From positions 124,001-188,000 of the forward strand of contig NIVC01001935.1 in assembly GCA_002269645.1 (NCBI GenBank): DNA of 64,000 nt. Reading direction: 5' to 3'. The translations under genes were made by a program, and so were the position numbers. Source of the stretch: Macrostomum lignano. Its lineage: Eukaryota. Positions 12,001 through 45,300 of this stretch are shown here, piece after piece. The notes under the pieces were generated by a model, which was given only the letters and a program-made list of their open reading frames with translations, did not search any database and was not told the DNA's origin. How positions within the stretch are numbered: position 1 is the stretch's first letter; each line of letters begins with the position of its first letter.

Positions 12001-12736
12001 TCTGCTCCCTGCTCTCCCTGCATCTTTGTGTCTGCTCCCTGCTCTTCCTGCATCTTTTTGTCTGCTCCCTGCTCTCCCTGCATCTTTATGTCCGCTCCCT
12101 GCTCTCCCTGCATCTTTGTGTCCACACCTGCTCTTCCTGTATCTTTGTGTCCGCTCCCTGCCCTCCCTGCATCTTTGTGTCTGCTCCCTGCTCTTCCTGC
12201 ATCTTTGTGTCCGCTCCCTGCCCTCCCTGCATCTTTGTGTCTGCTCCCTGCTCTTCCTGCATCTTTGTGTCTGCTCCCTGCCCTCCCTGCATCTCCAAGG
12301 CCGCACCCTGCCCTCCCTGCATCTCCAAGGCCGCACCCTGCCCTCCCTGCATCTCCAAGGCCGCACCCTGCCCTCCCTGCATCTCCAAGGCCGCACCCTG
12401 CCCTCCCTGCATCTCCAAGGCCGCACCCTGCCCTCCCTGCATCTCCAAGGCCGCACCCTGCCCTCCCTGCATCTCCAAGGCCGCACCTTGCCCTCCGTGC
12501 ATCTCCAAGGCCGTACCCTGCCCTCCCTGCATCTCCAAGGCCACACCCTGCCCTCCCTGCATCTCCAAGGCCGCACCCTGCACGCTGGTCACAAAGGCGG
12601 GCGCGTCGCTGTCCATCTCGGCGCCGGGGCCCGCGGCCCGGGTGATGTCATCAGCAGAGGTGCCGGCCGGAGCCAGAAGGCCGCCGACCGCAAGCAGAAA
12701 GGCGAGAATGTGGAGTTTGGGTAATTTTTCCTTCAT
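1..12736 (-). CDS. SEMA5: Semaphorin-5-like: signal peptide, Sema, PSI, thrombospondin-1 repeats, TM helix, Gln-rich tail; 13 coding exons; 1-bp frameshift near 6481; stop codon at or just past the window edge
   Basis: Exons with GT-AG boundaries and matching phases: 12577-12736 (MKEKLPKLHILAFLLAVGGLLA), 9346-9457, 9119-9236, 8236-8563, 8027-8127, 7579-7796 (RVARMCKSD), 7330-7489, 6297-7208 (PSI CLAARDPHCGW plus two TSP1), 5174-5356, 4520-4708 (degenerate TSP-like), 3115-3309, 1489-1695, 1-1306 (TSP, TM VGAVAAAWILSLALTACIAFSAAFCC, tail). The Sema+PSI+TSP1+TM architecture is diagnostic of class 5 semaphorins. Confidence 0.92.
1830..3114. repeat. 14-bp minisatellite (CAGGCACTCCGACC), ~90 copies, SEMA5 intron
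   Basis: Near-perfect tandem array abutting the exon at 3115. Confidence 0.98.
3435..3700. repeat. 20-bp minisatellite (GGGCGCGCCATTTCATTTGA)
   Basis: About 12 tandem units. Confidence 0.95.
4783..5145. repeat. ~26-bp C-rich minisatellite (CCCCACCTCACTCCCCGCCCATTCCTA-like)
   Basis: Degenerate tandem units. Confidence 0.9.
5968..6263. repeat. 10-bp minisatellite (CCCAGCTCAT)
   Basis: About 29 tandem units. Confidence 0.97.
8652..9015. repeat. 21-bp minisatellite (AACAAGGAGATTCTCGTGTCT)
   Basis: About 17 tandem units. Confidence 0.96.
9550..11125. repeat. 20/21-bp minisatellite (GAGCACCCCTGTCTCTTGGT)
   Basis: About 78 units with several variant types. Confidence 0.97.
11950..12580. repeat. 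30-bp minisatellite with two subtypes, anchored on the SEMA5 exon-1 donor
   Basis: Units CCGCACCCTGCCCTCCCTGCATCTCCAAGG grading into TCTGCTCCCTGCTCTCCCTGCATCTTTGTG. Confidence 0.96.
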
Positions 12737-25300: not shown

Positions 25301-27324
25301 GATGGGAAATTGTGAGGGAGGGATGGGAATAGTGAGGGGAAGTGGGAAGGGAATGGGGAATTGTGGGGGAAGTGATAGGGGAATGGGGAATTGTGAAAGA
25401 GTGATGGTGAAAGTGAGGGGAAGCGGAGGAAATGGGGAATTGTGAGGGGAAGTGGGAGCGAAAGCCAGAAGCAGCAAAACCGGAAACCATTGAACCACAA
25501 CTCTCACCTTGACCTGAGCGGCCACGCTGCACAGGTGGTCGCCGCTGTCTTGGTCGAAGGTGTCAATCTGCAGGCGGAAGGGGACTCCCTTCTCTCCGCC
25601 GTGCTTCCTGGTTGTGAACTCGGTGCTGATGCAGTTGAGCTTCACGCAGGCAGCGCACGGAGCTCCCGGCTGCCACAGGACCTCCACCGCGTTGATGCAG
25701 GCAGGGGAGGCGGCGATCCCGCGCAGGTTGTAGGACAGCGGGATGTCGATGTCGAGAACCCGTTCGCCAGGCCGGTTCTGGCGCCAGCACTCCAGGTGCT
25801 CCTGCTCCATGAACTGCAGGCGCCGGTCGTAGAAGCCGGCTCGAAACTCGCTCTGGGGGTTGCCAGGCGGGGTTGTCGCAGTGACTGGGCTTTTGCCATT
25901 GGCTGCTGCTTAGCTAAATGACCTGCTGATCCCCTCCCTACCTGCTGATCCCCTCCCTACCTGCTGATCCCCTCCCTACCTGCTGATCCCCTCCGTACCC
26001 GCTGATCTCCTCCCCACCTGCTGATCCCCTCCCTGCCTGCTGATCCCCTCTCCACCTGCTGATCTCCTCCCTGCCTGCTGATCCCCTCCCCACCTGCTGA
26101 TCCCCTCCGTACCCGCTGATCCCCTCCGTACCTGCTGATTCCCTCCCTACCTGCTAATCCCCTCCCTACCTGCTGATCTCCTCCCTACCTGCTGATCCCC
26201 TCCCTACCTGCTGATCCCCTCCCTGCCTGCTGATCCCCTCCCTACCTGCTGATCCCCTCCCTACCTGCTGATCCCCTCCGTACCCGCTGATCCCCTCCCT
26301 ACCTGCTGATCCCCTCCGTACCCGCTGATCCCCTCCCTACCTGCTGATCCCCTCCGTACCTGCTGATCCCCTCCCTACCTTTGATCCCCTCCCTACCTGC
26401 TGATCTCCTCCCTACCTGCTGATCCCCTCCCTACCTTTGATCCCCTCCCTACCTGCTGATCTCCTCCCTACCTGCTGATCCCCTCCCTACCTTTGATCCC
26501 CTCCCTACCTGCTGATCCCCTCCCTACCTGCTGATCCCCTCCCTACCTTTGATCCCCTCCCTACCTGCTGATCCCCTCCCCACCTGCTGATCCCCTCCCT
26601 ACCTTTGATCTCCTCCCTGCCTGCTGATCCCCTCTCCACCTGCTGATCTCCTCCCTGCCTGCTGATCCCCTCCCCACCTGCTGATCCCCTCCCCACCTGC
26701 TGATCCCCTCCCAAGATTCTGAATTCTGATCCTACTTAGCCGCTCAGCAACATGCTCAGAAGATTTCTCACTCTAAGATTTCGCGCTATGTCCGCACTGG
26801 CAGAGCAGGACATTGTCACTTCATACGGCTGACCTGCAATTGAGAAACAATTTGAGGATTAGGTGCGGAATTAAAATCAAGAATTAAAATTTTTGTTAAA
26901 CTATAACTGTGGACTCGCCTTGATTCAAATAAGTCAGCGGCTCCTCATTGAGCTTAATCAGGGGCGAGGTGCAGGCAGACAAAGCGAAGTTGAACTGAAG
27001 CTCCGCGCCGCCGACAGACCGCTCCGGACAGGCGAATGACGCAGCGCCGGCATCGTGCTGGGCGGTGGTGGCAAGCTTGAATGGAGCCAGCGGCAATGGC
27101 AGGACCACGGGCGGCTCTGCAGATGCGACTACAGGTGACAACAGATGGAGCTGCTGAATTTGATCTGGCCCAGCAACCAGACTGATCAGCTGGTTCTCAA
27201 AGCCGGCTACAGTTAGCAATGGCGGGATCATTGGCTGCCACTCGCCAGTCTGGAATCCTGGCCTGAGTTGCACAAAGCCTGCAGCTGAGCCCTGTGCCAG
27301 GGGCAGAGGTCCGTTGGCTGACAT
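19379..27324 (-). CDS. TFCP2: CP2/LSF (TFCP2/gemini-like) transcription factor, 7 coding exons
   Basis: Exons 26919-27324 (EPLTYLNQG), 26772-26833 (GQPYEVTM), 25508-25852 (FYDRRLQF; CISTEFTTRKHGGEKGVPFRLQIDTF), 23908-24191 (VFKPKGADRKHKMD), 22666-23045 (SAM-like WLQRHRF...GTDLLRL), 21255-21397, 19379-19492 (ends TGA). Phases all agree and the motifs are hallmark CP2-family sequences. Confidence 0.93.
19520..20930. repeat. 23-bp minisatellite (GCCTCACCTGTGCCTGTCTCAGG), last TFCP2 intron
   Basis: About 60 units. Confidence 0.98.
21381..21820. repeat. 44-bp tandem repeat containing the TFCP2 exon-6 acceptor
   Basis: 10 essentially identical units GTACACCGGGTGGAACACTGCAATATTGGGTCAGGGGTCATTGG; the first overlaps the exon. 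Confidence 0.98.
21817..22497. repeat. 16-bp minisatellite (CATAGGGTCACTGGGT)
   Basis: About 42 units. Confidence 0.98.
23120..23365. repeat. 24-bp minisatellite, block 1 (CCAGTCCAAGGAGTGACGGAAACC)
   Basis: About 10 units. Confidence 0.93.
23700..23875. repeat. 24-bp minisatellite, block 2 (same family as 23120-23365)
   Basis: About 7 units in the same orientation. Confidence 0.93.
24285..25460. repeat. 21-bp G-rich minisatellite (GGGAATTGTGAGGGAGGGATG)
   Basis: About 55 units. Confidence 0.96.
25921..26712. repeat. 20-bp minisatellite (CCTGCTGATCCCCTCCCTAC)
   Basis: About 39 units. Confidence 0.97.
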
Positions 27325-28261: not shown

Positions 28262-30685
28262 TTCAACTTTCTCTAAAATAAACGAACGAAGACCAGAAAA
28301 AATGACAAACGTAATGTATTATAATATAGTATTAGCTAGTATACATTGACAAATAATTAGGAAATGAAATTATTATCAACGATTCAAGTAACATTGTCCT
28401 AGAAAAGAAAGCACTCCTAAAGCGATTGCGATATTCTCAAATATTGCTTGTCATTAAATACACAGCGGAAGGTGGTGGCGGCTTGAGCGCGATAATTTTT
28501 ATTAAATTAAATATCTTCGTTTAAAAAGTTAATGTGCTTAAATAAGCAAAATATCATAAAAATAAAGCACACTTTAAATTATGCTTTTGCTAAGTGTCTT
28601 GCTACTTTTAAGTCACAAGCTAATTTTTTTTCGGTAGTGGGACGTTCTCATTTGTTTAAAAGCATAAGTTAAAAACTACAACACCGTTGACTACAATAAT
28701 GACTCTAAAACACTACAACACACGCGATAAACTACGTGCCAATAAAAGTCCCACGTCAAAAATGTACAGGGATTAGATGGCGTTTTAATACGTGTATTCT
28801 AGCACTTTTTGAATTTAAGGCGTAAAAATTTGTTCTAGCTTTAAAAGATTGGTTATAGTTATACCAATTGCAACTAGACCCCCTATATTGAAGTACATGT
28901 ATGCATAGCATAGCATAGGAATAGTTCACTCATTTTGGATTAAAGATCATTTGTATTAAAGAATAAAGATCACTTGTAGCAAAGTGTACCCCCTGATTGT
29001 CATTTATTTTTACCTTGGTTTTTTGTCTTTTCATATACTTTGGGTGTGTCAAAGTTTGTCACTGTATACCTGTCTAGATTATATAGGCATAGGCCTATAC
29101 ACTTGTGGGTAGTGCAGCTACAAATTATATTTAGTGTAAGCTATACCAGTGCATTTAACTTTAAGATGCATTAGGTGTTTACAGACCAACCTATTGGAAG
29201 AGTTTAATAAGTAGATTTAGCAGGGACAGCACAATCAAAATTTGTCTATGCAGCAAATAATAATCATCATGAATCTTGACAAGATGCCTGCAACCAAGCA
29301 GATCTGCAAGGTGTTTAGTAGCTGGGGTTTGAAATTTGAATGACAACCTAAACTGCCTGGTTGCTAAGGATGAAACCTGGTTCCACCTGGATGGCAAGGG
29401 CAGCAAGGCAGACATGTTGGTACTCATGTTGGGTTGGATAAAGTACCCATCAGCACTCTGCTCCAAAAGCAGTGCCTTGCCATGCCAATAGAAGCACAAT
29501 GCTGCATCCCAAAGCAACTGTTGAGTTGAACTACTAGTGATTGCGCCAATGTATCTTTGTGGCTCTTATATGTAGACTAAAAATTGGCAATTCGATATAG
29601 ATAAACATGTCATTATAGATAAAAGACTATGATAAAAATCTACAATAAATCAACAAAAATCAACAGCTTTAGATATTGGTTATTAACTTAAAAATATCTA
29701 ACAGTAAAATAACTATTTATATCCTGGTTTGACCTTACAAAAGAGACCTAAGGATGCCATTGCCAAACATGCATTGAACAAAGACCTAGCACAATCCACA
29801 ATGTTCTCATTGATTGCCTTTAGCTGCAACAGAAGCTTGATAGAAATAGCAGTACAGTTAGAAGCAGAAGCTTGAGCTTTAGAGCTGGGGTGCAATGGCC
29901 AAAATTCATGTCAAATTAGGCTTCTAGAAATGTCTGTGCAAGTGCAGACTTCAATCGCTAGGCTGATTTTATCAGATCACTTGTCAAAGCAGATGTAAAT
30001 TGATTACAATCATAAAAAATGGACAATAAAAACTACATTAATAGTTTGCTAATATAGTAAATATAGTAACTAATTAGAGATTTAGTATATTTGCAATAAA
30101 ACAAAAAAACAGGAAAGAAACAAACAATACACAATTTCTTAACATCAATATTTTTAATAAAATAGTACTTGATGAGATAAAGTAGGCCTAAATGAACAGG
30201 AGCTAAAGTTATTTTTATATTTACCACTGTCATCAACAAGTACTACCAATCTAATTGCAAGCTCTTCAATGCAGGTAGGCCTACACCATCAATGTAAAAC
30301 CAATTTTTGCCCTGAAGCAACAACATAGATGTAACCCTATGAATGTGAAAATAAAACAATAAGGGTAAACTCTCCTTTACTATTGTGTCTAAGAACATGT
30401 CTAAGTGACAGAAACAATAAATGGCCAGATTAAAAAAAACAAATGATGGAAGAGTTAAGAACTTACATTCCACTGCTCAATGGTATGCGGTGGGTTATGG
30501 CTATGTTGGCTCTAAAGACAATTGGCACACAGTTGCAAAAAGTGGCACAAGGTGCACCAAAAAATGTGTACTATGAGCTGAATTGAATCATACATGCGCA
30601 ACTTCTGAAATTACGCTGGCCGTGCGACTTAGTTTTCGATCAAAAATGCGACTTACCTATGTAAGAAAGCTAAACAAAGAATTGT

Positions 30686-30750
30686 GGGTAAACGGCAGGA
30701 GTAACTATGACCATATTTTAAAGGCTAAATGCCTCGCCAGCTAATTAGTG
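30686..30750 (+). other. Diverged 65-nt 28S rRNA fragment (H68-H71 region, R2/I-PpoI target); not an rRNA gene
   Basis: GGGTAAACGGCAGGAGTAACTATGAC-14 nt-TAAATGCCTCGCCAGCTAATTAGTG. Against the canonical 28S sequence as recalled, the flanks match 25/26 and 22/25 and the core matches 5/14. Confidence 0.85.
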
Positions 30751-31885: not shown

Positions 31886-32099
31886 CCTTGCTAGTTAGAA
31901 AGTTTCAAAGAACCCGAGGGGCGAGGGCCAGATAGAGGGGCTTCGCGAGCTGGACTTTGCCGACCCCTGCTCCGGAGTTAAAGAAATCAATGGGAAACTG
32001 TTGACATAGGCTGCTGATTTCAAAGATCTTGTCTATGGTTGAAGGCTTCTATTCTGTTTTTTTTGCTCTCCTGCCACACTTGCACCTACTACCCCTTGA

Positions 32100-33180
32100 T
32101 CGCCTCTGATTGCGACTTACTTCCCTCTTATTGCGACTTAGTTGCTCCTTTTGCAACTTACCTAACCCTTTTGCGACTTACCTAATCCTTTTTGCGACTT
32201 ACCTAATCCTTTTGCGACTTACCCAATCCTTTTTGCGACTTACCTAATCCTTTTGCGACTTGACCTAATCCTTTTTGCGACTTAGTTGCTCCTTTTGCGA
32301 CTTACCTAATCCTTTTTGCAACTTAGTTGCTCCTTTTGCGACTTACCTAACCCTTTTGCGACTTACCTAATCCTTTTTGCGACTTACCTAATCTTTTTGC
32401 GACTTGACCTAATCCTTTTTGCGACTTAGTTGCTCCTTTTGCGACTTACCTAACCCTTTTGCGACTTACCTAATCCTTTTGCGACTTACCTAATCCTTTT
32501 TGCGACTTGACCTAATCCTTTTTGCAACTTAGTTGCTCCTTTTGCGACTTACCTAATCCTTTTGCGACTTACCTAATCCTTTTTGCGACTTACCTAATCC
32601 TTTTGCGACTTACCTAATCCTTTTTGCGACTTAGTTGCTCCTTTTGCGACTTACCTAACCCTTTTGCGACTTACCTAATCCTTTTGCGACTTACCTAATC
32701 CTTTTTGCGACTTGACCTAATCCTTTTTGCGACTTAGTTGCTCCTTTTGCGACTTACCTAATCCTTTTGCGACTTACCTAATCCTTTTTGCGACTTACCT
32801 AATCCTTTTGCGACTTACCTAATCCTTTTTGCGACTTACCTAATCTTTTTGCGACTTGACCTAATCCTTTTTGCGACTTAGTTGCTCCTTTTGCGACTTA
32901 CCTAATCCTTTTGCGACTTACCTAATCCTTTTTGCGACTTACCTAACCCTTTTGCGACTTACCTAATCCTTTTGCGACTTACCTAATCCTTTTTGCGACT
33001 TGACCGAATCCTTTTTGCAACTTAGTTGCTCCTTTTGCGACTTACCTAATCATTTGTGCAACTTAATTTGCTTCTGCTGCAACTTGTTTTTCTTTTGCTT
33101 CACCATTTTACTTCCCTATATTGCTCTTTCCTCTTGCATTTTTTCGTTTTTGGTCAACTCAATTTTGCGACTTACCCTGG
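32100..33180. repeat. 20-22-bp minisatellite (TTTTGCGACTTACCTAATCCT) inside the TIR element
   Basis: About 45 units with a TTAGTTGCTCC variant. Confidence 0.96.
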
Positions 33181-33484: not shown

Positions 33485-33753
33485 ATTGCAGCGCATGGCT
33501 TAAGTACGCCAGACGCCTACACAACCTGCGCCACGCTGTGAAATGACTTACCTGTGAAAGAAACCTAAAGCAAAGTTAACGCAGTTTTGGGTAAACGGCA
33601 GGAGTAACTATGACTGTCTTATCAAGCCTAAATGCCTCGGCATCTAATTAGTACTGCGCCGCGCCGTACTAATCGCCGCGCGCGTATGCGCCGCGCCGCG
33701 CCGTATTAGATCCGCGCCGGACGCCGTCCGCCAAAATGCCCATGCGCTGCAAT
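33485..33753. mobile_element. MITE-like element (269 bp) carrying a 28S-derived segment
   Basis: 14-bp inverted repeat ATTGCAGCGCATGG (33485-33498) / CCATGCGCTGCAAT (33740-33753), with GC-rich GCGCC repeats near the right end. No convincing TSD. Confidence 0.55.
33589..33653 (+). other. Second diverged 65-nt 28S rRNA fragment; not an rRNA gene
   Basis: GGGTAAACGGCAGGAGTAACTATGAC-14 nt-TAAATGCCTCGGCATCTAATTAGTA. Flanks match recalled 28S 25/26 and 22/25; core matches 7/14. Confidence 0.85.
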
Positions 33754-36328
33754 CAGGTCTTGTCTGTTGCTACCTAATCAATTGTTTTAAAATATAAAAC
33801 GATGAAAATTGCCTAGTATGGGGGATTCCATGCAGACCAAAGGGATTTTTTATTATACTTACTATCTAAAGGTTTATTAATAGTCATCAAACAAGCTCAA
33901 AATGTTTAAGAATTATTGAAAATATCAGTGAAACTAGATGCGACTTATAAATATATTAACTTCATTTAGCCTAGTTTAAATAGATGCATTTCATAGTTTC
34001 CACTTGACCATAATAATTTAAGCAAAGATGAAAACTTACAAAACTTAAGCATAACTTACAATGCCTGACTGTTATGTATAGAAATCTGTCACTTGACAGC
34101 TTGTTGGTCAGGCACATAGTGCCGTGAAGAAAACTGCACATTGGAAACCTTTTCATGCAACATTTTGGCTTGCCTTGATCTCTAAAATATATCTTTTTTA
34201 TATATTACAAAGCAGAAAATTTCTTAAAAAACTTACTTAACAAAACAGTAAAAAAATCTATGTACTATAGATAGAATTTCGTACCATATTTTCACATTTA
34301 TTATAGAAATAGAATTTAATAGAAATTGCTATTAAATTCAGCATAGAAATTCAGCAAATTCAGCAAATTTAGCATTAATATAGAATTTTTTTCAATAATA
34401 GAAATATTAAATAGAAACAAAATTTATACAAATATAATATACTAAATTATGTCTATTACAACAAGAAAAAGGAATTAAAGGCAATTGGCAAATGGCAAAA
34501 TTATAGCAAAATGGAAAAATTGTTTTCTATGTTCCCCTTGTATATTTTAGGCCTAAGAAAATTAAAATCACAATCACAATCACAATCAATCATTTAAAAT
34601 TTTACTATATAAGCTTAACTTCATCTACAAAATCAACATTCACTTTTACACAATCTACACCATTGCATTATATGTAGAAAATTTTTGCCAATTACTCCAA
34701 GCATTCTTCAAACTCAAAAAGATATCTTTTTAGGCCCAAAAATCTCTAGGCTCAACAAGATGATATGCCTAAAGCAAGGCACAAGATATGTCAGCATTGA
34801 TGCATAACTAGTCAGCAAATATTATTTTACTTTGCTTCTCCACAAAACTAGCAAGTTTATCATGGCTATCTCCAATGAAATAAATACAAGCAAGTCCTTT
34901 GCACTACATGCTTCAGTAATTTTTTTCAATGGTAGAAACATTATTTGTAGCTAACAATGCCATAGACTGTCACCTTCCCATGTTTGCAGCCAATTATAAA
35001 AGTCCTTTATTTTTACAACAGCTTTGCTAGGCTTGTAAAAGTGGAATAGAACACATTGAATTATCATAGACCTCTTCTTGAAGAGCAAATTGTAGGTAGT
35101 CTAGACATCATATCTTGGAACAGCCTTTGACAGAACTACTTGGTTCTTACAAGCAATTTCAGCTCACTTATATCAACTTTGTTTTTAGCATGTCTTTACT
35201 GGTATGACTCACAAATGTGCTGCAACAATTGAGACTTATAAATTCCATGTTTGGCACCATCGGGTTCACTTGACTTCCTAAATAGAAAGATATAACTGAT
35301 GCCTTGACTCTCCTTTTCTAGGCTGGTTTTTTCTTCCAATTTAGGGCACACTTGTTCTGGCTAGTTTTCTTGTTGCTGCTCTTCATTCTTCACATTCTTC
35401 ATACATTGGTTAAACTTCTGGAAGCTAAGGCTATGCTATTGTCCTTGGTAGCTACAGTCTCTTCATTGGTGCCACCAATAGCAGGATGTCTAGAAGCAAC
35501 AATAGAATCAGTGTCTGCCCTGCTAGTTGAGTCATTATCAGGATCATTTATCAAGTGTAGAGTCCTCTTATTCATGCCTTTTCTATTTGGAATAAGTAAA
35601 TTAGTTGATAAGTGTTAAGTATAGCAGGATTTTATTAAAACTTATATTGTGATATAGTACAATAGTCTTCTATTTGCTAGCCAACTTGTCCAATTCAAAT
35701 CTTTCTATCATTGTCCTTGAATTCTACTTTTCTTTCTCTTTCTCAATCTTCAGAAACTTGTTAGTTGACAATGGGATTAACTCATCCTTGAAGACCAAAT
35801 GGCATTTACCATCAGAAATGTCATCCCAATAAACCAAGACATGTTGCCTTCTAGAGGCTATTGCACTGAATTGATGGTTGCAGGAGGCCTTTTGGTACCC
35901 TGGCGCAACAAATTTAAAGTTGAGTCAAATTAATTCATAGTTGATGCCTTGCCTTATTCCTGGCTTAGGTTGGCCTGGAAATGATAGTATATTTAAAAAA
36001 ATCATTTTTAAATAATAATTTCAGTCACACTTTTAGTAAATATGCCAAAATCAAGTATAAAACTTTTCTTTGATATTATTATAAAGTATTTTAATAAGAA
36101 AATAGGCCTAAATAAAAGATGTACAATTTGTATTTCTAATTGCTATTAAAATAAGAACGTGAAATGCATTATCAATATGCTTATGGTCATGCAATCCATA
36201 TCCACTATGGCACCTGAATATTCAATAATGTGGTTTGTTTCCTTTGTTATCTTACAAAATATGTTTAATGAAACCAGATGAAATCCAAGCTATCCCATTA
36301 CCCAAATTCCCTCAGCCTAGCAACTGGC

Positions 36329-39300
36329 ATGACAGGTTCTTCACCAGACTTGCTTGGTCGTCGCATTGAACTAGATGGTCATTTTGGCATTGTGAAATAC
36401 ATTGGGCCAGTGGGTAGCAGTCGAGACACTTGGCTAGGCATAGACTGGGATGAACCTGAGCGCGGCCGGCACAATGGCACGCACAATGGAGTACAGTACT
36501 TTAAGGTAGGTGTTGCATAAGATTGTTACATGGCTGCTCTCAGTCATGGTTAAATGTGCACTGCATAGGGCCAATAGGTTAATGTTAAAAAGTATATACA
36601 GCTGAAATGGTTTCTGAGAAGCTTTCATACTAGTAACTAATATCATTCGTAGGAAGAATGATAAAAGGCACAACCTAAAAGTAGACCCAGAAGTATGATA
36701 AAAGACAGCTAGGAAGGAAACCGTCAAACATAAAACCGTCAAGCATGAAACTGTCAAACATGAAACCGTCAAACATGAAACCGTCAAACATGAAACCGTC
36801 AAACATTAAACTCTCACAAGTAACACTGGCACTGAATCCCTTCATCCTGCCGAGAACGGCCGTCGCTCTGGTGCCTCGTCTCTCTGTCGCTACTGTCACC
36901 GGTTGCTCTGGTCGCGCTGCACTGGTCATCGAGTCCTGCCGTTGCTGCGCAGCCGTGTCGCTCCGTTAGGACCCGTCAACGCCGGTCCACCTCCGCTCCG
37001 CTGTCCCTGGGTCTGCACTGCAAAGTCCCTAGGAAGACACAGCCTCAGCCAGCGCACGAATCCCACAGCCTACGGAGGGCACCCAGGACCAAACCCTGGC
37101 GTCGCAGGTCGAACAGCGGAAACACCACCATCACCGACATGTAGACCGCTTGGCGACTCCACCGACGAACTCCGTGCCCCGGATACTTGCGGCCGTCGCG
37201 CTCGACAAACCCAAAAACTTGCAGGAACAACTCCGGGGCGAATTCTCTGAAGTCCACCCGGTTGACAGCACACAGAGGTTTCAGGGCAAAAACTACACAG
37301 AAGAGGGCCCCACGATCACCGCTCCGCACTGCTTGGTGTAAGCGCTTTTTTATCAGCCCGATTCCAGGAATTTCGGCGACTCGAACCGGTGGACGCGGGG
37401 TTACCTGTAGCTGGCTTATTTTCCGTAGGAATTCTGCGATGAGTTCGGCGCATCCTCCGCACGCTTCCTCTCTTACCCAGCTACTGTCGAGAACGTCGAA
37501 CCCGGCCCACTGCAGACGAAACTCTCTTCCCTCCTCAGTTTCGCGCACTGCCAACACATTCAAAACTTCAAACTCCTCCTGGCCACGCTCCGCTACGTTT
37601 TCCTCGTCCGTCACTGCGTAACCAATTTCACTATTCTCCGTCTCGGTTTCGCCCGCTGACTCCCATTGCCGCTGGAACGTTTCTTCGGCCAACCTGTCTC
37701 CTTCTGTCGAGAAAATAATAAGAGTAAACACACTACGTTTAAATTAGGTGTTAAATTGAATAAGGAGCCAGCAAGTCGGCACAAGGCCCAAACCGATATA
37801 TTTATATGACATTAACTTTAGGGGTGCAAGATAAGACAAGGGGGTGGGGTGCGCGACTGAGGAAAAAGGCGAGAACGGAGAGCCAATCAGAACGCAGCAA
37901 GGGAGAGAGAGATAAGAATAACAAGATTGAGCTAGACAGAGAGAGAGAGAAAACAGAGACAAGTGAAGGTGAACTAAGAAATGACTAGGAAAGTCGCGAC
38001 ACTCCTCCCAAAAAATAGAACATTTTTTTGAATTCTCGAGTACTAACAGAAATTATGAATGAGAGTTCAAAACCCAATAATTTTTTGCAGTAAATTAACA
38101 AATTGTGTACAAATATGACTATGACTATCGACTATGACTATGAATTTCACTACAAAACCTATAGAGTAAATGCAAAATTGACCAAAAAATTTAACATGTG
38201 CGATTTTAAATAACGAATTATTATAACCAAATTAAAAACTGACTGTATCCTCCCCCCAAAAATTAATTTAATTTTCTTTACATTAAGACTCTGAGGAAAA
38301 AAAACAAGGACAACAAGTTAGGTTAATTAGTTAAGATGTCCAGGCTTGCGCATCACTTCGTCCCGTAGATCATCCGGCATCTCGTCGTCGTCCAGCATCT
38401 CCTCCGCAATTTCCAGTAGCCTATCGGGCTCCAAAATCATGCCTCCGAACCAATCATATAGCTTTCGGCGGAACGGGCAGGATAGCAGCCGGTACGCTTC
38501 CTCGCACTCCTGGAACTGCTGCTTGAGGATGCTCTGTCGCCTCTCTTGTCGGGATGGGACTCCCGAGCTCGACGGTAGAATGCTTTCCGGATTTCTGAGG
38601 CCGTCGCTTCTTTGGCAACACCCAATCGCTCATACAGATTCGACATCTTAAAACCGTTTAAAACTTCTGCTACTAGTATTAAATGGGTTTATCCGCTCTC
38701 TTCGCCGATATCTCTATACTACGCGTCGTACGCTTGCCCGGATCAGAAGTAAACCGGCTGTCCGAACCGGTCCGGGGGTCTCCGTCGTCGTCGCGGTCGG
38801 ATACCCTCAGGCGGAGGCTCGGGTTCGATCTCCACTTCCTGGTGTGGTTCAATCACTTCAGGCTCCGGTGGCTCCAGCTCAGCCATCCTTTCCTCGTTCT
38901 CCACCAGTAATCCCTCGTCGCGAATCAGATGAATTCCTTGTCGGACGCCTTCCTCAAGCTCTGGCAGTCTAGCGCAGAAGATATCGTCCTCGTCGTCGTC
39001 GTCCTCAGCATTCTCATCCTGTCGCAGTATCGGCTCAGCAATGCGGAAAAAATCTGCGATAAATTGTCGGTAATACCCGCACAGTCCCAGGAATGACCTT
39101 ACTTCCTTGGCATTCTTCGTAGTTGGCCAGTCACGAATTTCGGCAATCTCTTCTGAACTCGTGGAGATTCCATCAGCTGACACTATGTGTCCCAGGAAGG
39201 TCACTGACTTCAGCAGGAATGCGCACATCTTCGGCTTCAGTTTGATGTTCGCTGCTCGCAACCGTCGAAAGACCGTTTGCAACCGCTCCAGGTGCTCCTC

Positions 39301-42300
39301 CACCGTTCTTGACCACACTAGCAAGTCGTCCAGATACACCAAACACGTCTTCCAGCACAACTTCCCCAACACCACATTCATTAGTCAGCTGAATGAAGCC
39401 GGCGAATTCGTCAATCCAAATGGCATAACGTCCCAGGCGTACTGCTGTACCCGGTGTGAAACGCCAAAAGCCGTCTTTAGTCTGTCGCTGGGTTCCACTG
39501 CCATTTGCCAGTATCCTGACTGCATGTCCATGGTCGAAAAAATCTTGGCACCGCCTAGGCTCTCCAACAGGTCATCTGTCCTGGGCAACGGCACTGCATC
39601 CCTTTTGGTCATTTCATTCAGTTTCCGATAATCACAACAGAACCTCAGTGAACCGCCCTTTTTCACGCACACCACTGGCGAGCACCATGGGGACTGGTCC
39701 TTGCTGATTCCCCCAGCTTCCAGCAAGTCATCCAACTCCTTGTCCACTTCCTGCCGCAGGGAGTCCTTAGCAAAGACAGCCTGATGTTGGGAAACAGGTC
39801 TCTGAAGTCGGCTTCCTTCTCCTCCCACAGGCCACACGAACCCCACTCGCGGAACTCTTCGATCGGGTTCCATGCCTCCGCTTCATTCTTGGCCTCTACC
39901 TCGTCGTCCAAGCGCATCCCTTCTTGACCCTGATCATACAACTGGATGTATTCAGCAGTCTCGTCTGCAGCCGTCCATCCTCGCCGGGCGCTACCCGCTA
40001 CCAGAGCTCGAGCCAGTGCCAAATCCTTCTCAGCGACCCTTACCGGCTTTTCCGTGATGCCGACCGATCCGCAGTTTCTTGCGCCCTTTTTCTCCACCCT
40101 GGCTGGCATGATCACTTCTTGTCCAGGTTCCAGAAATACCGTTGTCTCGGCTTTTATTCGACACATCACAGGCAGCTAGCCTTTCTGCCATATTGGAACT
40201 TTGACATCACCAACTCGAAACACAAACTCGGAATAGTTGATGACGCAACGATGCTGTTAGAAAAATTCGGACCCGAGAATTACGTCATAACGCAATCCGT
40301 CCACTACAAAAAAATTCGCTGACCACCGCTCGCCACCAATCTCCACGTCCAACACAATACAGCCTCTCATCCTCATCGCACCTCCATTGGCCGTTGAAAG
40401 GGCCCCGCCCATTGCAGTCAGTCTCTCCCTCACATCTTGTGGCAGCCTCAGGAAAACATCACAGCTCAGCACTGACACACTCGCACCACTGTCTAACAGC
40501 AGAGCCACTGGCTTGTCGAAAACCGCACCGGAAATAAAAACTGTCACGGGCTCCGTTGATACTGACGAACACGCCTCTTGAACCAGGTTGCTCTTTGAAT
40601 TCCAATCACCAGAGACGCACTTGGATTTATTTACAGGGTTAGTGAGCAACACCGGTCCTCGCTCCTGGGAGACTTCACTTCCTGGCAGGGTACCGACTCT
40701 CCCCGGTCGGTCCCCTCGGCCCGTTTCCCGACTTCGGACACTTAAAGGATAGGTGGCCTTCACTGTTGCATTTTTGACATCGTACTGGCGATTTCCCGTT
40801 TCCACTTGTCTGGCTGGTCTTCTTTGGACACTTTGATGAGATATGGCCCCACTCTCGACACGAAAAATACTGCACAGCCTTCCGACTCGCCGGGGTCGGC
40901 TCTGCCGCTTCTCCAGACCTCCGCTCCTCCATGTCTTTCATTCGCATCTCCATGGCCGCAAGCTGTTTTCGAAGCATCTCGACCTCACTTCTTTCGGAAG
41001 CCTCCTGGTCTCAGCCGTGATAGCACAGACGGTAGCTCTTTTTGATCCCTGACCTGATGGACCGTGACTTGCCCTAACCGCCACTTCCAGCTGATGCACT
41101 AGACACATCGCGTCCGCTAAGGTCTCCGGCTGGCTCATGTACAATCGCTCCCGCACAGCCACCCCCGCACGGACGCCTCGCATGAATCGCTCTTTCGCAA
41201 GATCATCGCGCACATCGGCAGGCGCATCAGGAAAGGCGTTTGCGACCAACTCAATCACAGCTTCAGAGAAATCTTCTACCGACTCCTTCTCGCTCTGCTC
41301 TCTATTGCTCAGTTCGGTGCGGTAGTCGACGACGGTACGGTGCATAGTGAACCTATCCCTCAAGGCCTGGGTAAACTCTTCAAATGGCAAGTTGTCCTCA
41401 AGGTTCATGTTGTCAACAACTTGGAATGTGCTGAAGTCTAGTGAGCCGCAACCACTTCACGAAGTTCATGCCCAGAGCGAACTTCACTGGCCGCTGAATT
41501 CCGAGAGCACCAGCTTGCTGCATGTTCTGCTGGATCTGGGCCGTCAACGCAGCGACCAGGTCGTTTACACCGAAAGCCGCACCTCCCGCAGCACCTCCGG
41601 CAGCACCTCCAGCAGAACCTCCGGCAGCATCTCCAACAGCATCTCCAGCAGCACCTCCAATAGCATCTCCAGAAGCACCTCCGGCAGCACCCCCAGCCTC
41701 CATGCCTCAGCTTCCCAGTCTCGACCTCAAAGTCTCAAAATGTTCCGCGCCTCCAGTCTCCTTCCTTGCTTAATCTTCCGCAGCGCATGGTCCCACCAAG
41801 GATGCCAATTTGTGGGGCTCAAGGGCTCGGTCCCTTCGTACCCCTTTCCAGACCCGGGTTCGCGTACTGACCCTGGATGCGGTCCTCCACTGACACGCGT
41901 ACGACGCGGTGTCCTTCGTGACCAGGCTGCTCGAGCGTACGACGCGCGATAGCCTACAGTCTCGCGTACGACGCAGAGCTGCTTAGGGGGGGGGGGGCAG
42001 GCGTACGACGCTCTTAATCCCTCTAAGGTGCCTAGTTCAGATACAGACCCAAATGAATAGCAAAGTTGAAAGCTTACCAGCCGCGATTTCGATCGTTCAA
42101 CCCGGAAACAACGCCGACAGAGCGGTGGGAGTCTTCTTGGTATTCTCTATTTGTATTTCTATTTATTTAGAACAATTAGGACAATTAAGGACAATTTAGT
42201 GTAATAGCAACCAACACTGGCAACAATCACCGGGGAGCCACGAAGACGACGGAAATGGGGTCTCACGGGGGTCCGAATAAATAGGCAGCAAACTGGGGGT

Positions 42301-45300
42301 TGAGGGCGCGGGATGAAGGCGGTCACAGGGGGGGGGGCTTAGACAACAGCATGGGACAAACATGAGACGTACCAGTCAATCGCCGGGGCGCGGCACGGTA
42401 GTCTGGGACTGGCAGCCAATCACAAACTACAGGGGCGGGGCAGCTAGGCTTACAAAAGAATGGGGCGGGGTTGCACGCAAAGAATCGGGGGTCGAAGGCC
42501 GGCCAGACTGCCCCGACGTAGAATAGTGAACTTAACTCGTCACAATAACACATTCATGACAGAAGTATCATGAAATACAACCTGAAGAGTTGGAAGTATC
42601 CTGAAAGACAACCTGAAGAGTTGGAAGTATCATGAAAGACACAACCTGAAGAGTCGGAAGTATCATGAAAGACACAACCTGAAGAGTCGGAAGTATCATG
42701 AAAGACACAACCTGAAGAGTCGGAAGTATCATGAAAGACACAACCTGAAGAGTCGGAAGTATCATGAAAGACACAACCTGAAGAGTCGGAAGTATCATGA
42801 AAGACACAACCTGAAGAGTCGGAAGTATCATGAAAGACACAACCTGAAGAGTCGGAAGTATCATGAAAGACACAACCTGAAGAGTCGGAAGTATCATGAA
42901 AGACACAACCTGAAGAGTCGGAAGTATCATGAAAGACACAACCTGAAGAGTCGGAAGTATCATGAAAGACACAACCTGAAGATTTGGAAGTATGATAAAA
43001 GATACAACCGTAAGAGCCGAAAGTATGATAAAAAAAATAGCCGAAAAAGCTTCGGTTACATTAGCTTATGTTGATTCATCCTATAACGGTTTACATGTGT
43101 GCCAAATGCAAGCAGATAAATCTCCAGACAGTTCTGCTGTCTCAATGCTTGCATCCTGACAAGTCCCAATCCCGCGCATTCGCCAGGCTGCGCAGGCCAC
43201 GTCGGCCTCCTTCGTGAAGGCCAGCCGCGTCAATGCGGGCATCGGGCTGCTGGAAGGCATTATTCAGCGGTACACCGCGCCAACGGACGATTTCTGTGGA
43301 CTCAGCCAGGCCGAGCTGGCATTCGAAGGCGATCACAACAGAGATGCCAAGCCTATTGAGCTGTTCGGCATGGTCAAAACGGCTCAGCGAATTTCACAGC
43401 TGGCAACGCTGCAGTCGGTTCTGCTGACGGGTGAAGTTCTACTCCTTGCACCTGCCGCTTGCGCTGAGATTGGGGGCCTGGTTGTCGTATGTAAAAGCGA
43501 GAAAATTCCTATTATGAAGATAAAAGCCCCTAAAATCTCCACCCTTGAGTGGGGAACCCCTATTCTTCAGCGAGGAATCCCTATTCTTCAGTGAGGAATC
43601 CCTATTCTTCAGCGAGGAATCCCTATTCTTCAGTGAGGAATCCCTATTCTTCAGCGAGGAATCCCTATTCTTCAGTGAGGAATCCCTATTCTTCAGCGAG
43701 GAATCCCTATTCTTCAGCGAGGAATCCCTATTCTTCAGTGAGGAATCCCTATTCTTCAGCGAGGAATCCCTATTCTTCAGCGAGGAATCCCTATTCTTCA
43801 GCGAGGAATTCCTATTCTTCAGCGAGGAATCCCTATTCTTCAGCAAGGAATCCCTATTTATTAGTGAGAAGTTCTTTAAATACTTAATCGGAAAATATAT
43901 CTAATAAACAGCATTCGGATCTCACGATTGCAGATTTTTCTTCACGTATAAAATATTGGTTTCAATTGCAGTCTACGATCTGAAATGCAAATCCTGTTAT
44001 TTATAACCGCACCAAATGTCTGCACCCAGGCGTTCCCGTGGCATTCTGCAGCACCGGAGATGCCAGCGAACTGAGCAGCCGCCTGCCCAGCCTCACCGAG
44101 CTGGACCTGAGTCTCACCCTGTTCCACGATTGGGCCGAGTTGGCCAGAGTGGCCAAGGCTTTGCCAAATCTTCGGGTGCTCAATCTCAGCCAGAATGTGC
44201 TCGCCTCGCCTGTTGGTGCGTGCGGTGGACTGACTGTAATGTTTTTATTAGGATAGAAAGGTATTTCCAACAGGTACAGGTAGATAGAGGCAGATAGAAC
44301 AGATAGAAAACAGCAGATAGAAAACGGCAGATAGAACAGGTAGATAACCGCAGATAGAACAGGTAGATAACGGCAGATAGAACAGTCAGATAACGGCAGA
44401 TAGAACAGTCAGATAACGGCGGATAGAACAGGTAGATAACGGCAGATAGAACAGGTAGATAATGGCAGATAGAACAGTCAGATAACGGCGGATAGAACAG
44501 GTAGATAATGGCAGATAGAACAGGTAGATAACGGCAGATAGAACAGGTAGATAACGGCAGATAGAACAGGTAGATAACGGCAGATAGAACAGGTAGATAA
44601 CCGCAGATAGAACAGGTAGATAACGGCAAATAGAACAGGTAGATAACGGCAGATAGAACAGGTAGATAATGGCAGATAGAACAGGTAGATAACGGCAGAT
44701 AGAACAGTCAGATAACGGCGGATAGAACAGGTAGATAATGGCAGATAAAACAGGTAGATAATGGCAGATAGAACAGGTAGATAACGGCAGATAGAACAGG
44801 TAGATAACGGCAGATAGAACAGGTAGATAACGGCAGATAAAACAGGTAGATAACAACAGATAGAACAGGTAGATAACGGCAGATAGAACAGGTAGATAAC
44901 GGCAGATAGAACAGGTAGATAACGGCAGATAGAACAGGTAGATAATGGCAGATAGAACAGTCAGATAACGGCGGATAGAACAGGTAGATAATGGCAGATA
45001 GAACAGGTAGATAACGGCAGATAGAACAGGTAGATAACGGCAGATAGAACAGGTAGATAACGGCAGATAGAACAGGTAGATAACGGCAGATAGAACAGGT
45101 AGATAACGGCAGATAGAACAGGTAGATAACGGCAGATAGAACAGGTAGATAATGGCAGATAGAACAGTCAGATAACGGCGGATAGAACAGGTAGATAATG
45201 GCAGATAGAACAGGTAGATAACGGCAGATAGAACAGGTAGATAACGTCAGATAGAACAGGTAGATAACGGCAGATAGAACAGGTAGATAACGGCAGATAG

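What the first reader, a model, noticed from the sequence alone, without database searches (positions are those of the whole stretch)
37045..37731. Stand-alone HP1-like chromodomain gene at the 3' end of a Gypsy element
Seen: an uninterrupted 228-codon frame with an acidic N-terminus, a chromodomain with an intact aromatic cage and a possible chromo-shadow-like segment, same strand as pol but ~1 kb past its stop. It has TATA/CCAAT boxes upstream, a strong phase-1 acceptor and no ATG. Established: chromovirus chromodomains are fused to integrase, and HP1 reads H3K9me via the chromodomain and dimerises via the shadow domain. Inference: a retrotransposon-encoded HP1 mimic for anti-silencing or heterochromatin targeting, possibly located within the 3' LTR-like segment.
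Basis: partly seen in the sequence, partly recalled or inferred. Interest (0 to 1): 0.85.

Follow-up and report, generated by a model that had tools for sequence, protein, structure and literature searches.

The report
Retrotransposon J-domain–chromodomain accessory gene, decayed copy
The flagged frame is the broken back part of a third gene carried by a flatworm Gypsy retrotransposon; in intact copies this gene joins an Hsp70-recruiting J domain to an HP1-type histone-mark reader, a combination I found no report of in a mobile element.

Summary
The 228-codon frame is real. It lies on the minus strand at 37045-37731 and holds a genuine HP1-class chromodomain (Pfam E 8.6e-7). It is not a stand-alone gene. 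It is the 3' two-thirds of ORF3 of a Ty3/Gypsy element. The 5' third lies at 38646-38348 and carries the ATG and a J domain with an HPD motif. A frameshift and a ~640-bp AT-rich insertion separate the two parts.

In Macrostomum lignano the homologue is an intronless 328-aa protein (DnaJ plus Chromo). It starts 99 bp after pol and lies inside 835-bp LTRs (99.6% identical, 4-bp target duplications) in two full-length copies. It follows pol in a third, rearranged copy and in a chimeric gene model. The integrase has no chromodomain.

Behind the chromodomain is a small helical domain with no detectable relatives. It is not a chromo shadow domain. dN/dS between intact lineages is 0.18.

The window copy is dead: RNase H and integrase are deleted, there is no 3' LTR, and stops and frameshifts are present.

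I read ORF3 as a chromatin-directed Hsp70 co-chaperone. It may counter silencing or may serve integration. I found no published description.

The parts
41802..42561 (-). 5' LTR of the decayed Gypsy copy (boundaries approximate)
   Evidence: blastn against the L001 element: LTR position 1 aligns to 42561 and position ~824 to 41813, at about 82% identity. It matches both L001 LTRs. It abuts a 33-bp tandem array that begins at 42562.
40678..41703 (-). gag with CCHC zinc knuckles, now split over three reading frames; about 20 codons are missing near 41443
   Evidence: tblastn with L001 gag gives 91-93% aa identity in frames -2/-3/-2. Pfam finds Retrotrans_gag and zf-CCHC. dS to L001 is 0.09-0.20.
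39780..40741 (-). Aspartic protease region with two in-frame stops
   Evidence: Pfam finds Asp_protease_2 and RVP_2. tblastn gives 77% identity to L001. Stops counted.
39019..39759 (-). Reverse transcriptase, first ~248 codons only, with one in-frame stop
   Evidence: Pfam RVT_1. tblastn aligns pol aa 25-272 at 91.5%. dS to L001 is 0.16.
38743..39018 (-). Acidic C-terminal tail of pol (…RRRRPPDRFGQPVYF, then stop) joined directly to the RT. RNase H and integrase (about 750 codons in L001) are deleted.
   Evidence: ORF translation compared with the L001 pol tail …RRPPDRFGVPVYHY. No tblastn match to pol aa 273-1023 anywhere in the window.
38348..38646 (-). ORF3 5' part: ATG at 38646 preceded by AG, and a J domain with HPD at 38548-38556. 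Between the conserved GACAAG and TTCCAGGAG motifs at about 38516-38544 the window has 29 nt where L001 has 27, which shifts the frame.
   Evidence: tblastn aligns P0001 aa 1-34 in frame -2 and aa 41-99 in frame -1. Sequence read. HPD coordinates.
37705..38347 (.). AT-rich insertion (35% GC, about 640 bp) that splits ORF3 between codons equivalent to P0001 aa 99 and 102. It contains the TATA/CCAAT-like motifs and the apparent acceptor.
   Evidence: P0001, P0003 and P0005 are continuous here. GC is 0.35 against 0.57 in the flanking coding parts, and there is no other copy in the window or the loci. No terminal inverted repeats or target duplication were found.
37045..37704 (-). ORF3 3' part (the flagged frame minus its first 9 codons). 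It comprises an acidic linker (37576-37704), the chromodomain (37420-37578), a conserved helical core (37174-37392), a tail (37048-37173) and the TGA stop (37045-37047).
   Evidence: tblastn aligns P0001 aa 102-327 as a single in-frame stretch at 56% identity. Pfam Chromo. Alignment A1. Coordinates.
36786..37044 (-). Remnant of the 3' untranslated region. The element ends here, without a polypurine tract or 3' LTR.
   Evidence: The blastn block 36786-37258 matches L001 11258-10765 at 85.7%. Nothing below 36786 matches the element, even at word size 7.

Best explanation
What it is (shown):
- The flagged frame is the 3' two-thirds of ORF3, an accessory gene of a Ty3/Gypsy LTR retrotransposon family of the flatworm genus Macrostomum.
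- The copy in the window is decayed and lies antisense in an intron of a TBCE-like host gene.
- In intact copies ORF3 starts about 100 bp after the pol stop and lies before the polypurine tract and 3' LTR.
- It encodes a 287-328-aa protein with four parts: a J domain with the HPD motif, an acidic linker, an HP1/Swi6-class chromodomain, and a short helical domain without detectable relatives.
- The integrase of these elements has no chromodomain of its own.
- The window copy cannot make the protein. Its J domain is frameshifted, ~640 bp are inserted into the linker, no in-frame splice exists, RNase H and integrase are deleted, and the 3' LTR is missing.

How the intact protein most likely works (inferred):
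- It acts as a chromatin-directed co-chaperone. The chromodomain docks it on methyl-lysine-marked histone tails. The J domain switches on the host's Hsc70 at that place, so that a protein complex sitting there is taken apart. Auxilin does this for clathrin coats, and the polyomavirus T-antigen J domain does it for Rb-E2F.
- The outcome I favour (about 0.35) is loosening of repressive complexes on the element's own silenced copies, that is, anti-silencing.
- The main alternative (about 0.3) is docking and uncoating of the element's pre-integration complex on chromatin.
- Expression is probably from a spliced or trans-spliced subgenomic mRNA, because an AG sits directly before the ATG in three diverged copies (inferred).
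For: Homology and linkage:
- The only full-length relatives found are P0001/P0003 (M. lignano, DnaJ+Chromo, 328 aa, intronless) and P0005 (287 aa). Both databases were searched: 5.8 billion clusters and 1.84 billion representatives.
- L001 has 835-bp LTRs at 3718-4552 and 11560-12391, 99.6% identical, TG…CA, with target duplication GCTT. Inside them lie gag, PR, RT-RH-IN and ORF3 at 10001-10987.
- L002 is a second full-length copy with target duplication CTTA. L003 is a third, rearranged copy.
- P0004 is a chimeric model with MutS domains flanking IN-DnaJ-Chromo.

Domains:
- Pfam finds DnaJ at 4.7e-16 and Chromo at 1.4e-12 in P0001, and no chromodomain in pol.
- The predicted J-domain fold superposes on solved J domains at 1-1.5 A.
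- The best solved-structure matches of the chromodomain are H3K9me readers: Swi6, CBX5, CBX1, CDYL and MPP8.

Selection:
- L001 against L004 gives dN/dS 0.18 at dS 0.82. By region: J 0.13, chromodomain 0.13, helical core 0.14.
- Window against L001 gives dN/dS 0.18 for the ORF3 core.
- HPD and many core residues are invariant.

Decay of the window copy.

Other:
- AG|ATG is present in L001, the window and L004.
- Precedent for a reader of a repressive mark acting with a J protein against silencing: Arabidopsis SUVH1/3-DNAJ1/2 (PMC6711733).
Against: - No expression, binding or chaperone data exist. Every functional step is inferred from domains.
- The third aromatic cage residue is V (P0001) or L (P0005) in the intact proteins and aromatic only in the dead window copy. 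Methyl-lysine binding may be weak or redirected.
- The full-length AlphaFold2 model gives the chromodomain a pLDDT below 50, from a 4-sequence alignment.
- The role of the helical domain is unknown. Its last two helices (the tail) are absent from P0005.
- Only five loci support the linkage, all from one genus.
- Gene callers often skip transposons, so database counts underestimate the family and could hide solo or host copies.
- The AG before the ATG is only a dinucleotide.
Confidence: 0.75

Rival explanations
1. ORF3 is a trans-acting integration factor. The chromodomain tethers the pre-integration complex to marked chromatin, doing in a separate protein what the integrase-fused chromodomain does in chromoviruses. 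The helical domain would bind integrase or Gag. The J domain would recruit Hsc70 to uncoat or import the particle.
For: The integrase lacks a chromodomain while the same element carries one in ORF3. Chromodomains are a known accessory domain of LTR-retrotransposon polyproteins (PMC6338049). That chromodomains direct integration to heterochromatin in chromoviruses is from my own knowledge (Gao et al. 2008). An orphan C-terminal domain under purifying selection (dN/dS 0.14) could be an element-specific interaction surface.
Against: Targeting alone does not need a J domain, yet the J domain is the most constrained part (dN/dS 0.13). At least two of five known insertions lie in introns of conserved housekeeping genes: the TBCE-like gene in the window and a MutS-family gene in P0004. 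Heterochromatin targeting does not predict this, although the sample is tiny and biased by survival. No interaction has been tested.
Confidence: 0.3
2. ORF3 is a passenger. A host J-domain/chromodomain sequence was captured by the element and does nothing for it.
For: LTR retrotransposons do capture foreign ORFs (PMC5408684, title and abstract). A J+chromodomain architecture also exists as an ordinary intronless gene in an unidentified microbial eukaryote (P0103 in L005), so the fusion can arise in host genomes.
Against: There is purifying selection across all three modules at dS 0.8 to above 2. The gene is retained in at least three deeply diverged lineages (L001 type, L004 type, window type). 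A related Gypsy integrase is also followed by a similar J-domain ORF (P0009). A useless passenger should decay on that timescale.
Confidence: 0.1
3. One reading: the frame at 37045-37731 is the last exon of a live, spliced, stand-alone HP1-like gene at this locus, with its own promoter (TATA/CCAAT) and an upstream exon.
For: The frame is open for 228 codons and has no frameshift relative to P0001. An AG with a pyrimidine run precedes it.
Against: Relatives are intronless and continuous at this point. The only GT donor near the end of the upstream coding part is phase 0, and all nearby acceptors are phase 1 or 2 (read). The upstream part is itself frameshifted. The promoter-like motifs lie in an inserted AT-rich segment. 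There is no chromo shadow domain.
Confidence: 0.03
4. The chromodomain gene is a host gene or an independent retrocopy that merely lies next to a Gypsy fragment.
For: In the window alone, the missing 3' LTR leaves its position relative to the element's end undefined.
Against: The same gene follows pol at the same ~100-bp distance in L001, L002, L003 and P0004. In L001 and L002 it lies inside LTR pairs with target duplications.
Confidence: 0.02

Closest known systems
Chromoviruses (Ty3/Gypsy elements with a chromodomain at the C-terminus of integrase)
   Same: A Ty3/Gypsy LTR retrotransposon that carries a chromodomain, presumably to read histone marks.
   Different: The chromodomain is not part of integrase or of pol at all. 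It lies in a separate ORF after the pol stop, fused to a J domain and a helical domain. Clade membership by RT phylogeny was not tested.
HP1 / Swi6 / CBX1-5 heterochromatin proteins
   Same: The chromodomain is closest in sequence to this class (Swi6 1.7e-10, CBX5 and CBX1 about 1e-9 for P0001). An acidic stretch precedes it. The first two cage residues are conserved.
   Different: There is no chromo shadow domain. A J domain lies at the N-terminus. The third cage residue is V or L in the intact copies. The gene is encoded by a mobile element.
Arabidopsis SUVH1/SUVH3-DNAJ1/DNAJ2 anti-silencing complex
   Same: A reader of a repressive chromatin mark is coupled to a J-domain protein, with the result that nearby transcription is enhanced (PMC6711733). 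This is the closest functional analogy for the favoured mechanism.
   Different: That is a host complex of separate proteins, in plants, and it reads methylated DNA through an SRA domain. Here there is one polypeptide, in an animal, with a histone-reading chromodomain, encoded by the element that would benefit. No homology is claimed.
Targeted J-domain proteins: auxilin and polyomavirus large/small T antigens
   Same: The architecture is a J domain with HPD plus a targeting module, which delivers Hsc70 to one specific complex for disassembly. T antigen shows that a virus-like element can encode such a protein (my own knowledge).
   Different: The targeting module here is a chromodomain. The client complex is unknown. 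There is no sequence relation beyond the J domain.
Accessory third ORFs of LTR retrotransposons (errantivirus env; bdelloid rotifer captured ORFs; plant Retand/Ogre extra ORFs)
   Same: An additional ORF sits between pol and the 3' LTR, probably needing a subgenomic mRNA (PMC5408684, PMC13524379, PMC11963269; titles and abstracts).
   Different: The content is new. It is not env-like and not an enzyme domain. No paper in the searchable library mentions a J domain, or a J domain plus chromodomain, in a retrotransposon ORF.

Membership tests
HP1/CBX family | N-terminal chromodomain (Pfam PF00385) | tested here: met
   Window frame: E 8.6e-7, 29.2 bits against a cut-off of 25.1. P0001: 1.4e-12. 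The best solved relatives are HP1-class. The domain is not N-terminal in the full protein, because a J domain precedes it.
HP1/CBX family | Three-residue aromatic cage for methyl-lysine | tested here: inconclusive
   Window copy F54/W75/F78, P0001 Y/W/V, P0005 Y/W/L, at the positions of HP1beta Y21/W42/F45. Binding was not measured.
HP1/CBX family | C-terminal chromo shadow domain (dimerisation; PF01393) | tested here: not met
   No Pfam hit at E<=10 for the C-terminal 87-129 residues of three family members. No PDB sequence hit. The AlphaFold2 model is five helices, pLDDT 83.7, from a 3-sequence alignment. Foldseek best E is 0.6-0.8.
Chromovirus (chromodomain-containing Ty3/Gypsy clade) | Chromodomain fused to the C-terminus of integrase | tested here: not met
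   L001 pol has RVT_1, RT_RNaseH, Integrase_H2C2, rve and Integrase_p58_C, but no Chromo. The chromodomain is in ORF3, beyond the pol stop and a 99-bp spacer.
Chromovirus (chromodomain-containing Ty3/Gypsy clade) | RT/IN phylogenetic placement within the chromovirus clade | not tested
   No reference set of Gypsy clades was available. M. lignano Ty3 elements are reported to fall in Mag, CsRN1, Gmr1/Osvaldo and Mdg3/Micropia (PMC12801592).
Ty3/Gypsy (Metaviridae) LTR retrotransposon | Paired LTRs (TG…CA) with a target-site duplication | tested here: met
   L001: 835-bp LTRs, 99.6% identical, duplication GCTT. L002: duplication CTTA. The window copy has only the 5' LTR.
Ty3/Gypsy (Metaviridae) LTR retrotransposon | Gene order gag - protease - RT - RNase H - integrase | tested here: met
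   Pfam on the L001 ORFs. The window copy keeps gag, PR and part of RT only.
J-domain proteins (class C / type III) | J domain with an HPD motif between helices II and III | tested here: met
   Pfam DnaJ 4.7e-16 (P0001) and 3.7e-15 (P0005). HPD is invariant in alignment A1, including the window copy at 38548-38556. The predicted fold matches solved J domains.
J-domain proteins (class C / type III) | No G/F region or zinc-finger/C-terminal DnaJ client domains | tested here: met
   No DnaJ_C or DnaJ_CXXCXGXG Pfam hits in P0001 or P0005.
J-domain proteins (class C / type III) | Stimulates Hsp70 ATPase | not testable with these tools
   Needs a biochemical assay.
Errantivirus-type three-ORF Gypsy elements | ORF3 encodes an envelope-like glycoprotein | tested here: not met
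   ORF3 consists of DnaJ plus Chromo plus a helical domain, and Pfam reports no envelope-family domain. Signal peptides and transmembrane segments were not specifically predicted. A hydropathy scan of the tail only peaked at about 1.35 (19-residue window).

The most novel reading that the evidence does not exclude
A family of animal LTR retrotransposons encodes its own anti-silencing factor. This would be a single protein that reads a repressive histone mark through an HP1-type chromodomain and uses a J domain to set the host's Hsc70 on the heterochromatin complexes sitting on the element, reopening silenced copies. The ORF3 core also seems to move between element lineages as a cassette: its synonymous divergence is saturated while the flanking gag, RT and 3' end differ by dS 0.1-0.3.
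Probability: 0.3. Interest if true: 0.85.

Novelty: new variant of a known kind. Interest (0 to 1): 0.68.

Why it matters
- Mobile elements are known to be silenced by H3K9-methyl heterochromatin. Some are known to use integrase-fused chromodomains to choose integration sites.
- Element-encoded proteins that act on chromatin through the chaperone system have not, as far as I could find, been described.
- A J domain welded to a histone-mark reader offers a simple, testable way for an element either to undo its own silencing or to dock and uncoat at chromatin.
- Macrostomum lignano has working transgenesis, and heat-shock-responsive LTR elements are already documented there (PMC12801592). The idea can therefore be tested directly in that animal.
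- The case also warns annotators. In GenBank these ORFs are labelled as ordinary 'J domain-containing proteins', and in one model the ORF is fused into a MutS-family host gene.

Tried and rejected
- **LTR pair inside the window.** blastn self-comparison found none. Only the 5' LTR is recognisable, through L001.
- **Chromo shadow domain.** Rejected.
- **F-box-like motif.** My own by-eye idea was that 'FGPELMLQILGYL…VRRW' is F-box-like and 'KKLHQAMRKGD' ankyrin-like. Pfam at E<=10 reported no family at all for this region, and the Foldseek PDB list showed no F-box protein. Dropped.
- **Intron reading of 37705-38347.** Rejected, because there is no phase-compatible GT-AG pair and relatives are continuous there.
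- **Nature of the ~640-bp insertion.** No terminal inverted repeats, target duplication or other copy was found. It stays unidentified.
- **Heat-shock elements in the LTR** (a possible link between the J domain and heat-induced M. lignano elements). None in the L001 LTRs or the window's LTR region.
- **Source of P0009** (J-domain ORF after a related integrase). Not on record, and a word-index search returned only generic bacterial DnaJ proteins.
- **Exact look-up of six window ORFs, to identify the source assembly.** None is in the collection. The species is inferred from the 90-94% nucleotide identity of gag and RT to M. lignano elements.
- **First dN/dS run for RT and PR.** It was wrong because MAFFT dropped stop symbols. 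It was redone.
- **Supplementary tables of PMC12801592.** Not held.
Full report
**1. The observation**

The coordinates 37045-37731 contain several stops on the + strand. On the minus strand they form an uninterrupted 228-codon frame ending in TGA. The frame has no ATG before its chromodomain.

Pfam finds a Chromo domain (PF00385) at residues 54-103 with E 8.6e-7 and 29.2 bits, above the curated 25.1. A search of solved structures returns only HP1-class chromodomains: CBX1/HP1beta 8.6e-6, then CDYL, MPP8, Swi6 and CBX5. In the alignment to HP1beta the cage positions Y21/W42/F45 are F54/W75/F78. The stretch before the chromodomain is acidic, with 14 D/E in 43 residues.

On the same strand upstream lie gag, zinc knuckles, protease and reverse transcriptase. 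The pol stop codon is at 38743-38745. The core of the observation therefore stands, with the strand made explicit.

**2. What the frame belongs to**

A search of 5.8 billion protein clusters with the frame gave one hit: P0001 from Macrostomum lignano, 328 aa, E 2.3e-70, 56% identity, carrying Pfam DnaJ plus Chromo.

The window has the missing front of that protein. An ATG at 38646 opens MSNLYERLGV…HPDK, a J domain. tblastn with P0001 aligns three stretches:
- aa 1-34 to 38646-38545, frame -2
- aa 41-99 to 38524-38348, frame -1
- aa 102-327 to 37704-37051, frame -2

Two defects follow from this:
- Between the first two stretches the window has 29 nt where L001 has 27. This is a frameshift.
- Between the second and third stretches lie ~640 bp of 35% GC sequence (37705-38347), against 56-57% GC in the coding parts. 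This segment is found nowhere else in the data at hand. It has no terminal repeats or target duplication.

The relatives are intronless and continuous at exactly this point. The only GT near the end of the upstream part is phase 0 (GAA|GTG). The AGs before EGDRLAEE are phase 1 or 2. The segment is therefore an insertion, not an intron.

**3. Is the gene part of the retrotransposon?**

Yes.
- In L001 (M. lignano NIVC01000672.1) two 835-bp direct repeats, 99.6% identical, lie at 3718-4552 and 11560-12391. They start with TG, end with CA, and are flanked by the duplication GCTT.
- Between them lie gag (4661-5761), protease (5695-6750), RT-RNase H-integrase (6747-9818, tail to 9901) and the DnaJ-Chromo ORF (10001-10987). 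About 570 bp, including a purine-rich tract, then precede the 3' LTR.
- L002 is a second full-length copy, 97.8% identical, with both LTRs and duplication CTTA. Its gag-pol is broken but ORF3 is intact.
- L003 is a third, rearranged copy.
- P0004 is a 2,698-aa chimeric model. MutS domains I and III precede, and IV and V follow, a block of integrase, DnaJ and Chromo. It represents a copy in an intron of a MutS-family gene.
- The integrase has Integrase_H2C2, rve and Integrase_p58_C but no chromodomain.

**4. State of the window copy, gene by gene**

- 5' LTR: about 41802-42561, 82% identical to L001.
- gag: split over three frames, with about 20 codons missing.
- Protease: two stops.
- RT: codons 25-272 only, with one stop.
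- RNase H and integrase: deleted. The RT runs straight into the acidic pol tail …RRRRPPDRFGQPVYF.
- ORF3: broken as described in section 2.
- 3' end: homology stops at 36786, and there is no polypurine tract or 3' LTR.

The remnant lies antisense between a CAP-Gly exon (36278-36520) and LRR exons (44038 onward) of a + strand TBCE-like gene. The species is inferred as Macrostomum. gag and RT are 90-94% identical in nucleotides to the M. lignano element. I could not confirm the assembly.

**5. The family and its evolution**

HMMER against 1.84 billion cluster representatives found only one more full-length relative. P0005 is 287 aa and 76% identical, from a 1,134-bp contig of run SRR24204725. 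A profile search of the larger database found nothing further.

Alignment A1 shows the following are invariant:
- the HPD motif and much of the J domain
- a DDLR…DRLAEE linker motif
- the chromodomain core
- a C-terminal block P..PV.VA…LHQA.R.GD…VDF.EF.PEL.LQ..G…DGRKY.GH

Nei-Gojobori estimates from my own script give:
- For the two intact genes L001 and L004, dN/dS is 0.18 at dS 0.82. By region: J 0.13, linker 0.31, chromodomain 0.13, C-terminal core 0.14.
- Window against L001: dS is 0.09-0.20 in gag, 0.16 in RT and 0.29 in protease. It is about 2.5 (saturated) in the ORF3 core, and 0.10 again in the last 45 codons.

L004 matches L001 from exactly the AG before the ATG to codon ~280, and not beyond. 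The ORF3 core thus behaves as an old, selected module that has been exchanged between otherwise similar elements.

A further protein model, P0009, has a Gypsy integrase C-terminus 43-48% identical to L001's. It is followed at once by a J domain 51% identical to ORF3's. This suggests the J-domain ORF is older than the Macrostomum family. Its source could not be traced.

**6. The rest of the protein**

No Pfam family matches the region behind the chromodomain, even at E<=10. No solved structure matches by sequence. AlphaFold2 on this region, with a 3-sequence alignment, gives a five-helix bundle with pLDDT 83.7 and pTM 0.76. Foldseek finds nothing in the PDB or in viral models; the best E is 0.6-0.8.

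This region is not a chromo shadow domain. The last two helices are the 'tail', which is absent from P0005. Only about three helices are therefore conserved.

The full-length model is poor, with mean pLDDT 60.5 and the chromodomain below 50. Its J domain nevertheless superposes on solved J domains.

The third cage residue is V in P0001 and L in P0005. The 'intact cage' holds only for the dead window copy.

**7. Mechanism**

Shown: the domain composition, the position of the gene in the element, and purifying selection.

Inferred: the J domain activates Hsc70, as the defining property of J domains with HPD. The HP1-class chromodomain places the protein on methyl-lysine histone tails. Together they deliver chaperone activity to marked chromatin.

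I favour disassembly of repressive complexes on silenced copies, at about 0.35. The analogies are:
- auxilin and T antigen (my own knowledge)
- the Arabidopsis SUVH1/3-DNAJ1/2 complex, in which a reader of a repressive mark plus a J protein enhances transcription (PMC6711733)

A trans-acting integration or uncoating role is nearly as likely, at about 0.3. It does not by itself explain why the J domain is the most constrained part. Two of the five known copies sit in introns of housekeeping genes. This is weak evidence against heterochromatin targeting.

An AG directly precedes the ATG in L001, the window and L004, although the upstream sequences differ. This hints at a splice or trans-splice acceptor.

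**8. Comparison and novelty**

- The element meets the tests for a Ty3/Gypsy retrotransposon.
- ORF3 meets the tests for a class C J-domain protein.
- It fails the defining test for HP1, because there is no chromo shadow domain.
- It fails the defining test for chromoviruses, because the chromodomain is not fused to integrase.
- ORF3 occupies the env position but is not env-like.

Five full-text searches found no description of a J domain, or of a J domain plus chromodomain, in a retrotransposon. The paper on M. lignano LTR elements does not mention one; its supplements were not available.

I rate the finding a new variant of a known kind: an LTR retrotransposon with an accessory ORF and a chromodomain, but with a new gene and a new architecture. 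The window copy itself is a pseudogene. The interest lies in the family it reveals.

Noticed in passing
window 36278-36520 (+), 44038-44256 (+), 45884-46219 (+), 46285-46548 (+): Exons of a + strand host gene with a CAP-Gly domain followed by leucine-rich repeats, the architecture of tubulin-folding cofactor E. The retrotransposon remnant lies antisense in the ~6.7-kb gap after the CAP-Gly exon (Pfam).
   Followed up: partly
window 32057-33043, 36730-36810, 42562-43033, 43471-43931, 44176-45900, 46423-48000, 49454-49998: The introns are packed with minisatellite arrays of 15-33-bp units, for example 23 bp in more than 60 copies at 44.2-45.9 kb and 33 bp at 42562-43033 directly abutting the 5' LTR. 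They create long spurious ORFs in several frames.
   Followed up: no
window 37705-38347: An AT-rich (35% GC) ~640-bp insertion of unknown origin lies inside ORF3. It has no terminal repeats, no target duplication and no second copy in the window or the fetched loci.
   Followed up: partly
window 36903-37250 (+) and L001 10773-11174 (-): A 115-133-codon frame is open on the strand opposite to the ORF3 tail and 3' UTR in both the window and L001. This is the block that is unusually similar between them (dS 0.10). It could be chance in GC-rich sequence or a conserved cis-element.
   Followed up: no
L005 794-1585 (ENA ERZ25067524 contig, 8.5 kb): P0103 is an intronless 263-aa gene with a DNAJB12-like J domain and an HP1-like chromodomain. 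It sits among ordinary genes (NUP50, complex I 49 kDa) in an unidentified eukaryotic metagenome contig. This is an independent, apparently host-encoded, instance of the J+chromodomain architecture.
   Followed up: partly
P0009 (498 aa; source not traceable): A protein model with a J domain, then a Gypsy integrase C-terminus (43-48% identical to L001's), then the same J domain again (51% identical to ORF3's). It hints that J-domain ORFs after pol occur in a wider Gypsy subgroup, possibly without a chromodomain.
   Followed up: partly
L002 3773-12395: In this second full-length copy gag-pol is broken into at least four ORFs, yet ORF3 is intact and differs from P0001 by one residue. This is either chance or a sign that ORF3 is kept when the rest decays.
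   Followed up: no
window 24893-25810 (-): An ORF with a CP2/grainyhead-type transcription factor domain (Pfam CP2, E 5.7e-18). It is probably an exon of another host gene.
   Followed up: no
window 30682-30749 and 33585-33652: A 68-nt direct repeat, 87% identical, 2.9 kb apart, of unknown nature (family D20).
   Followed up: no
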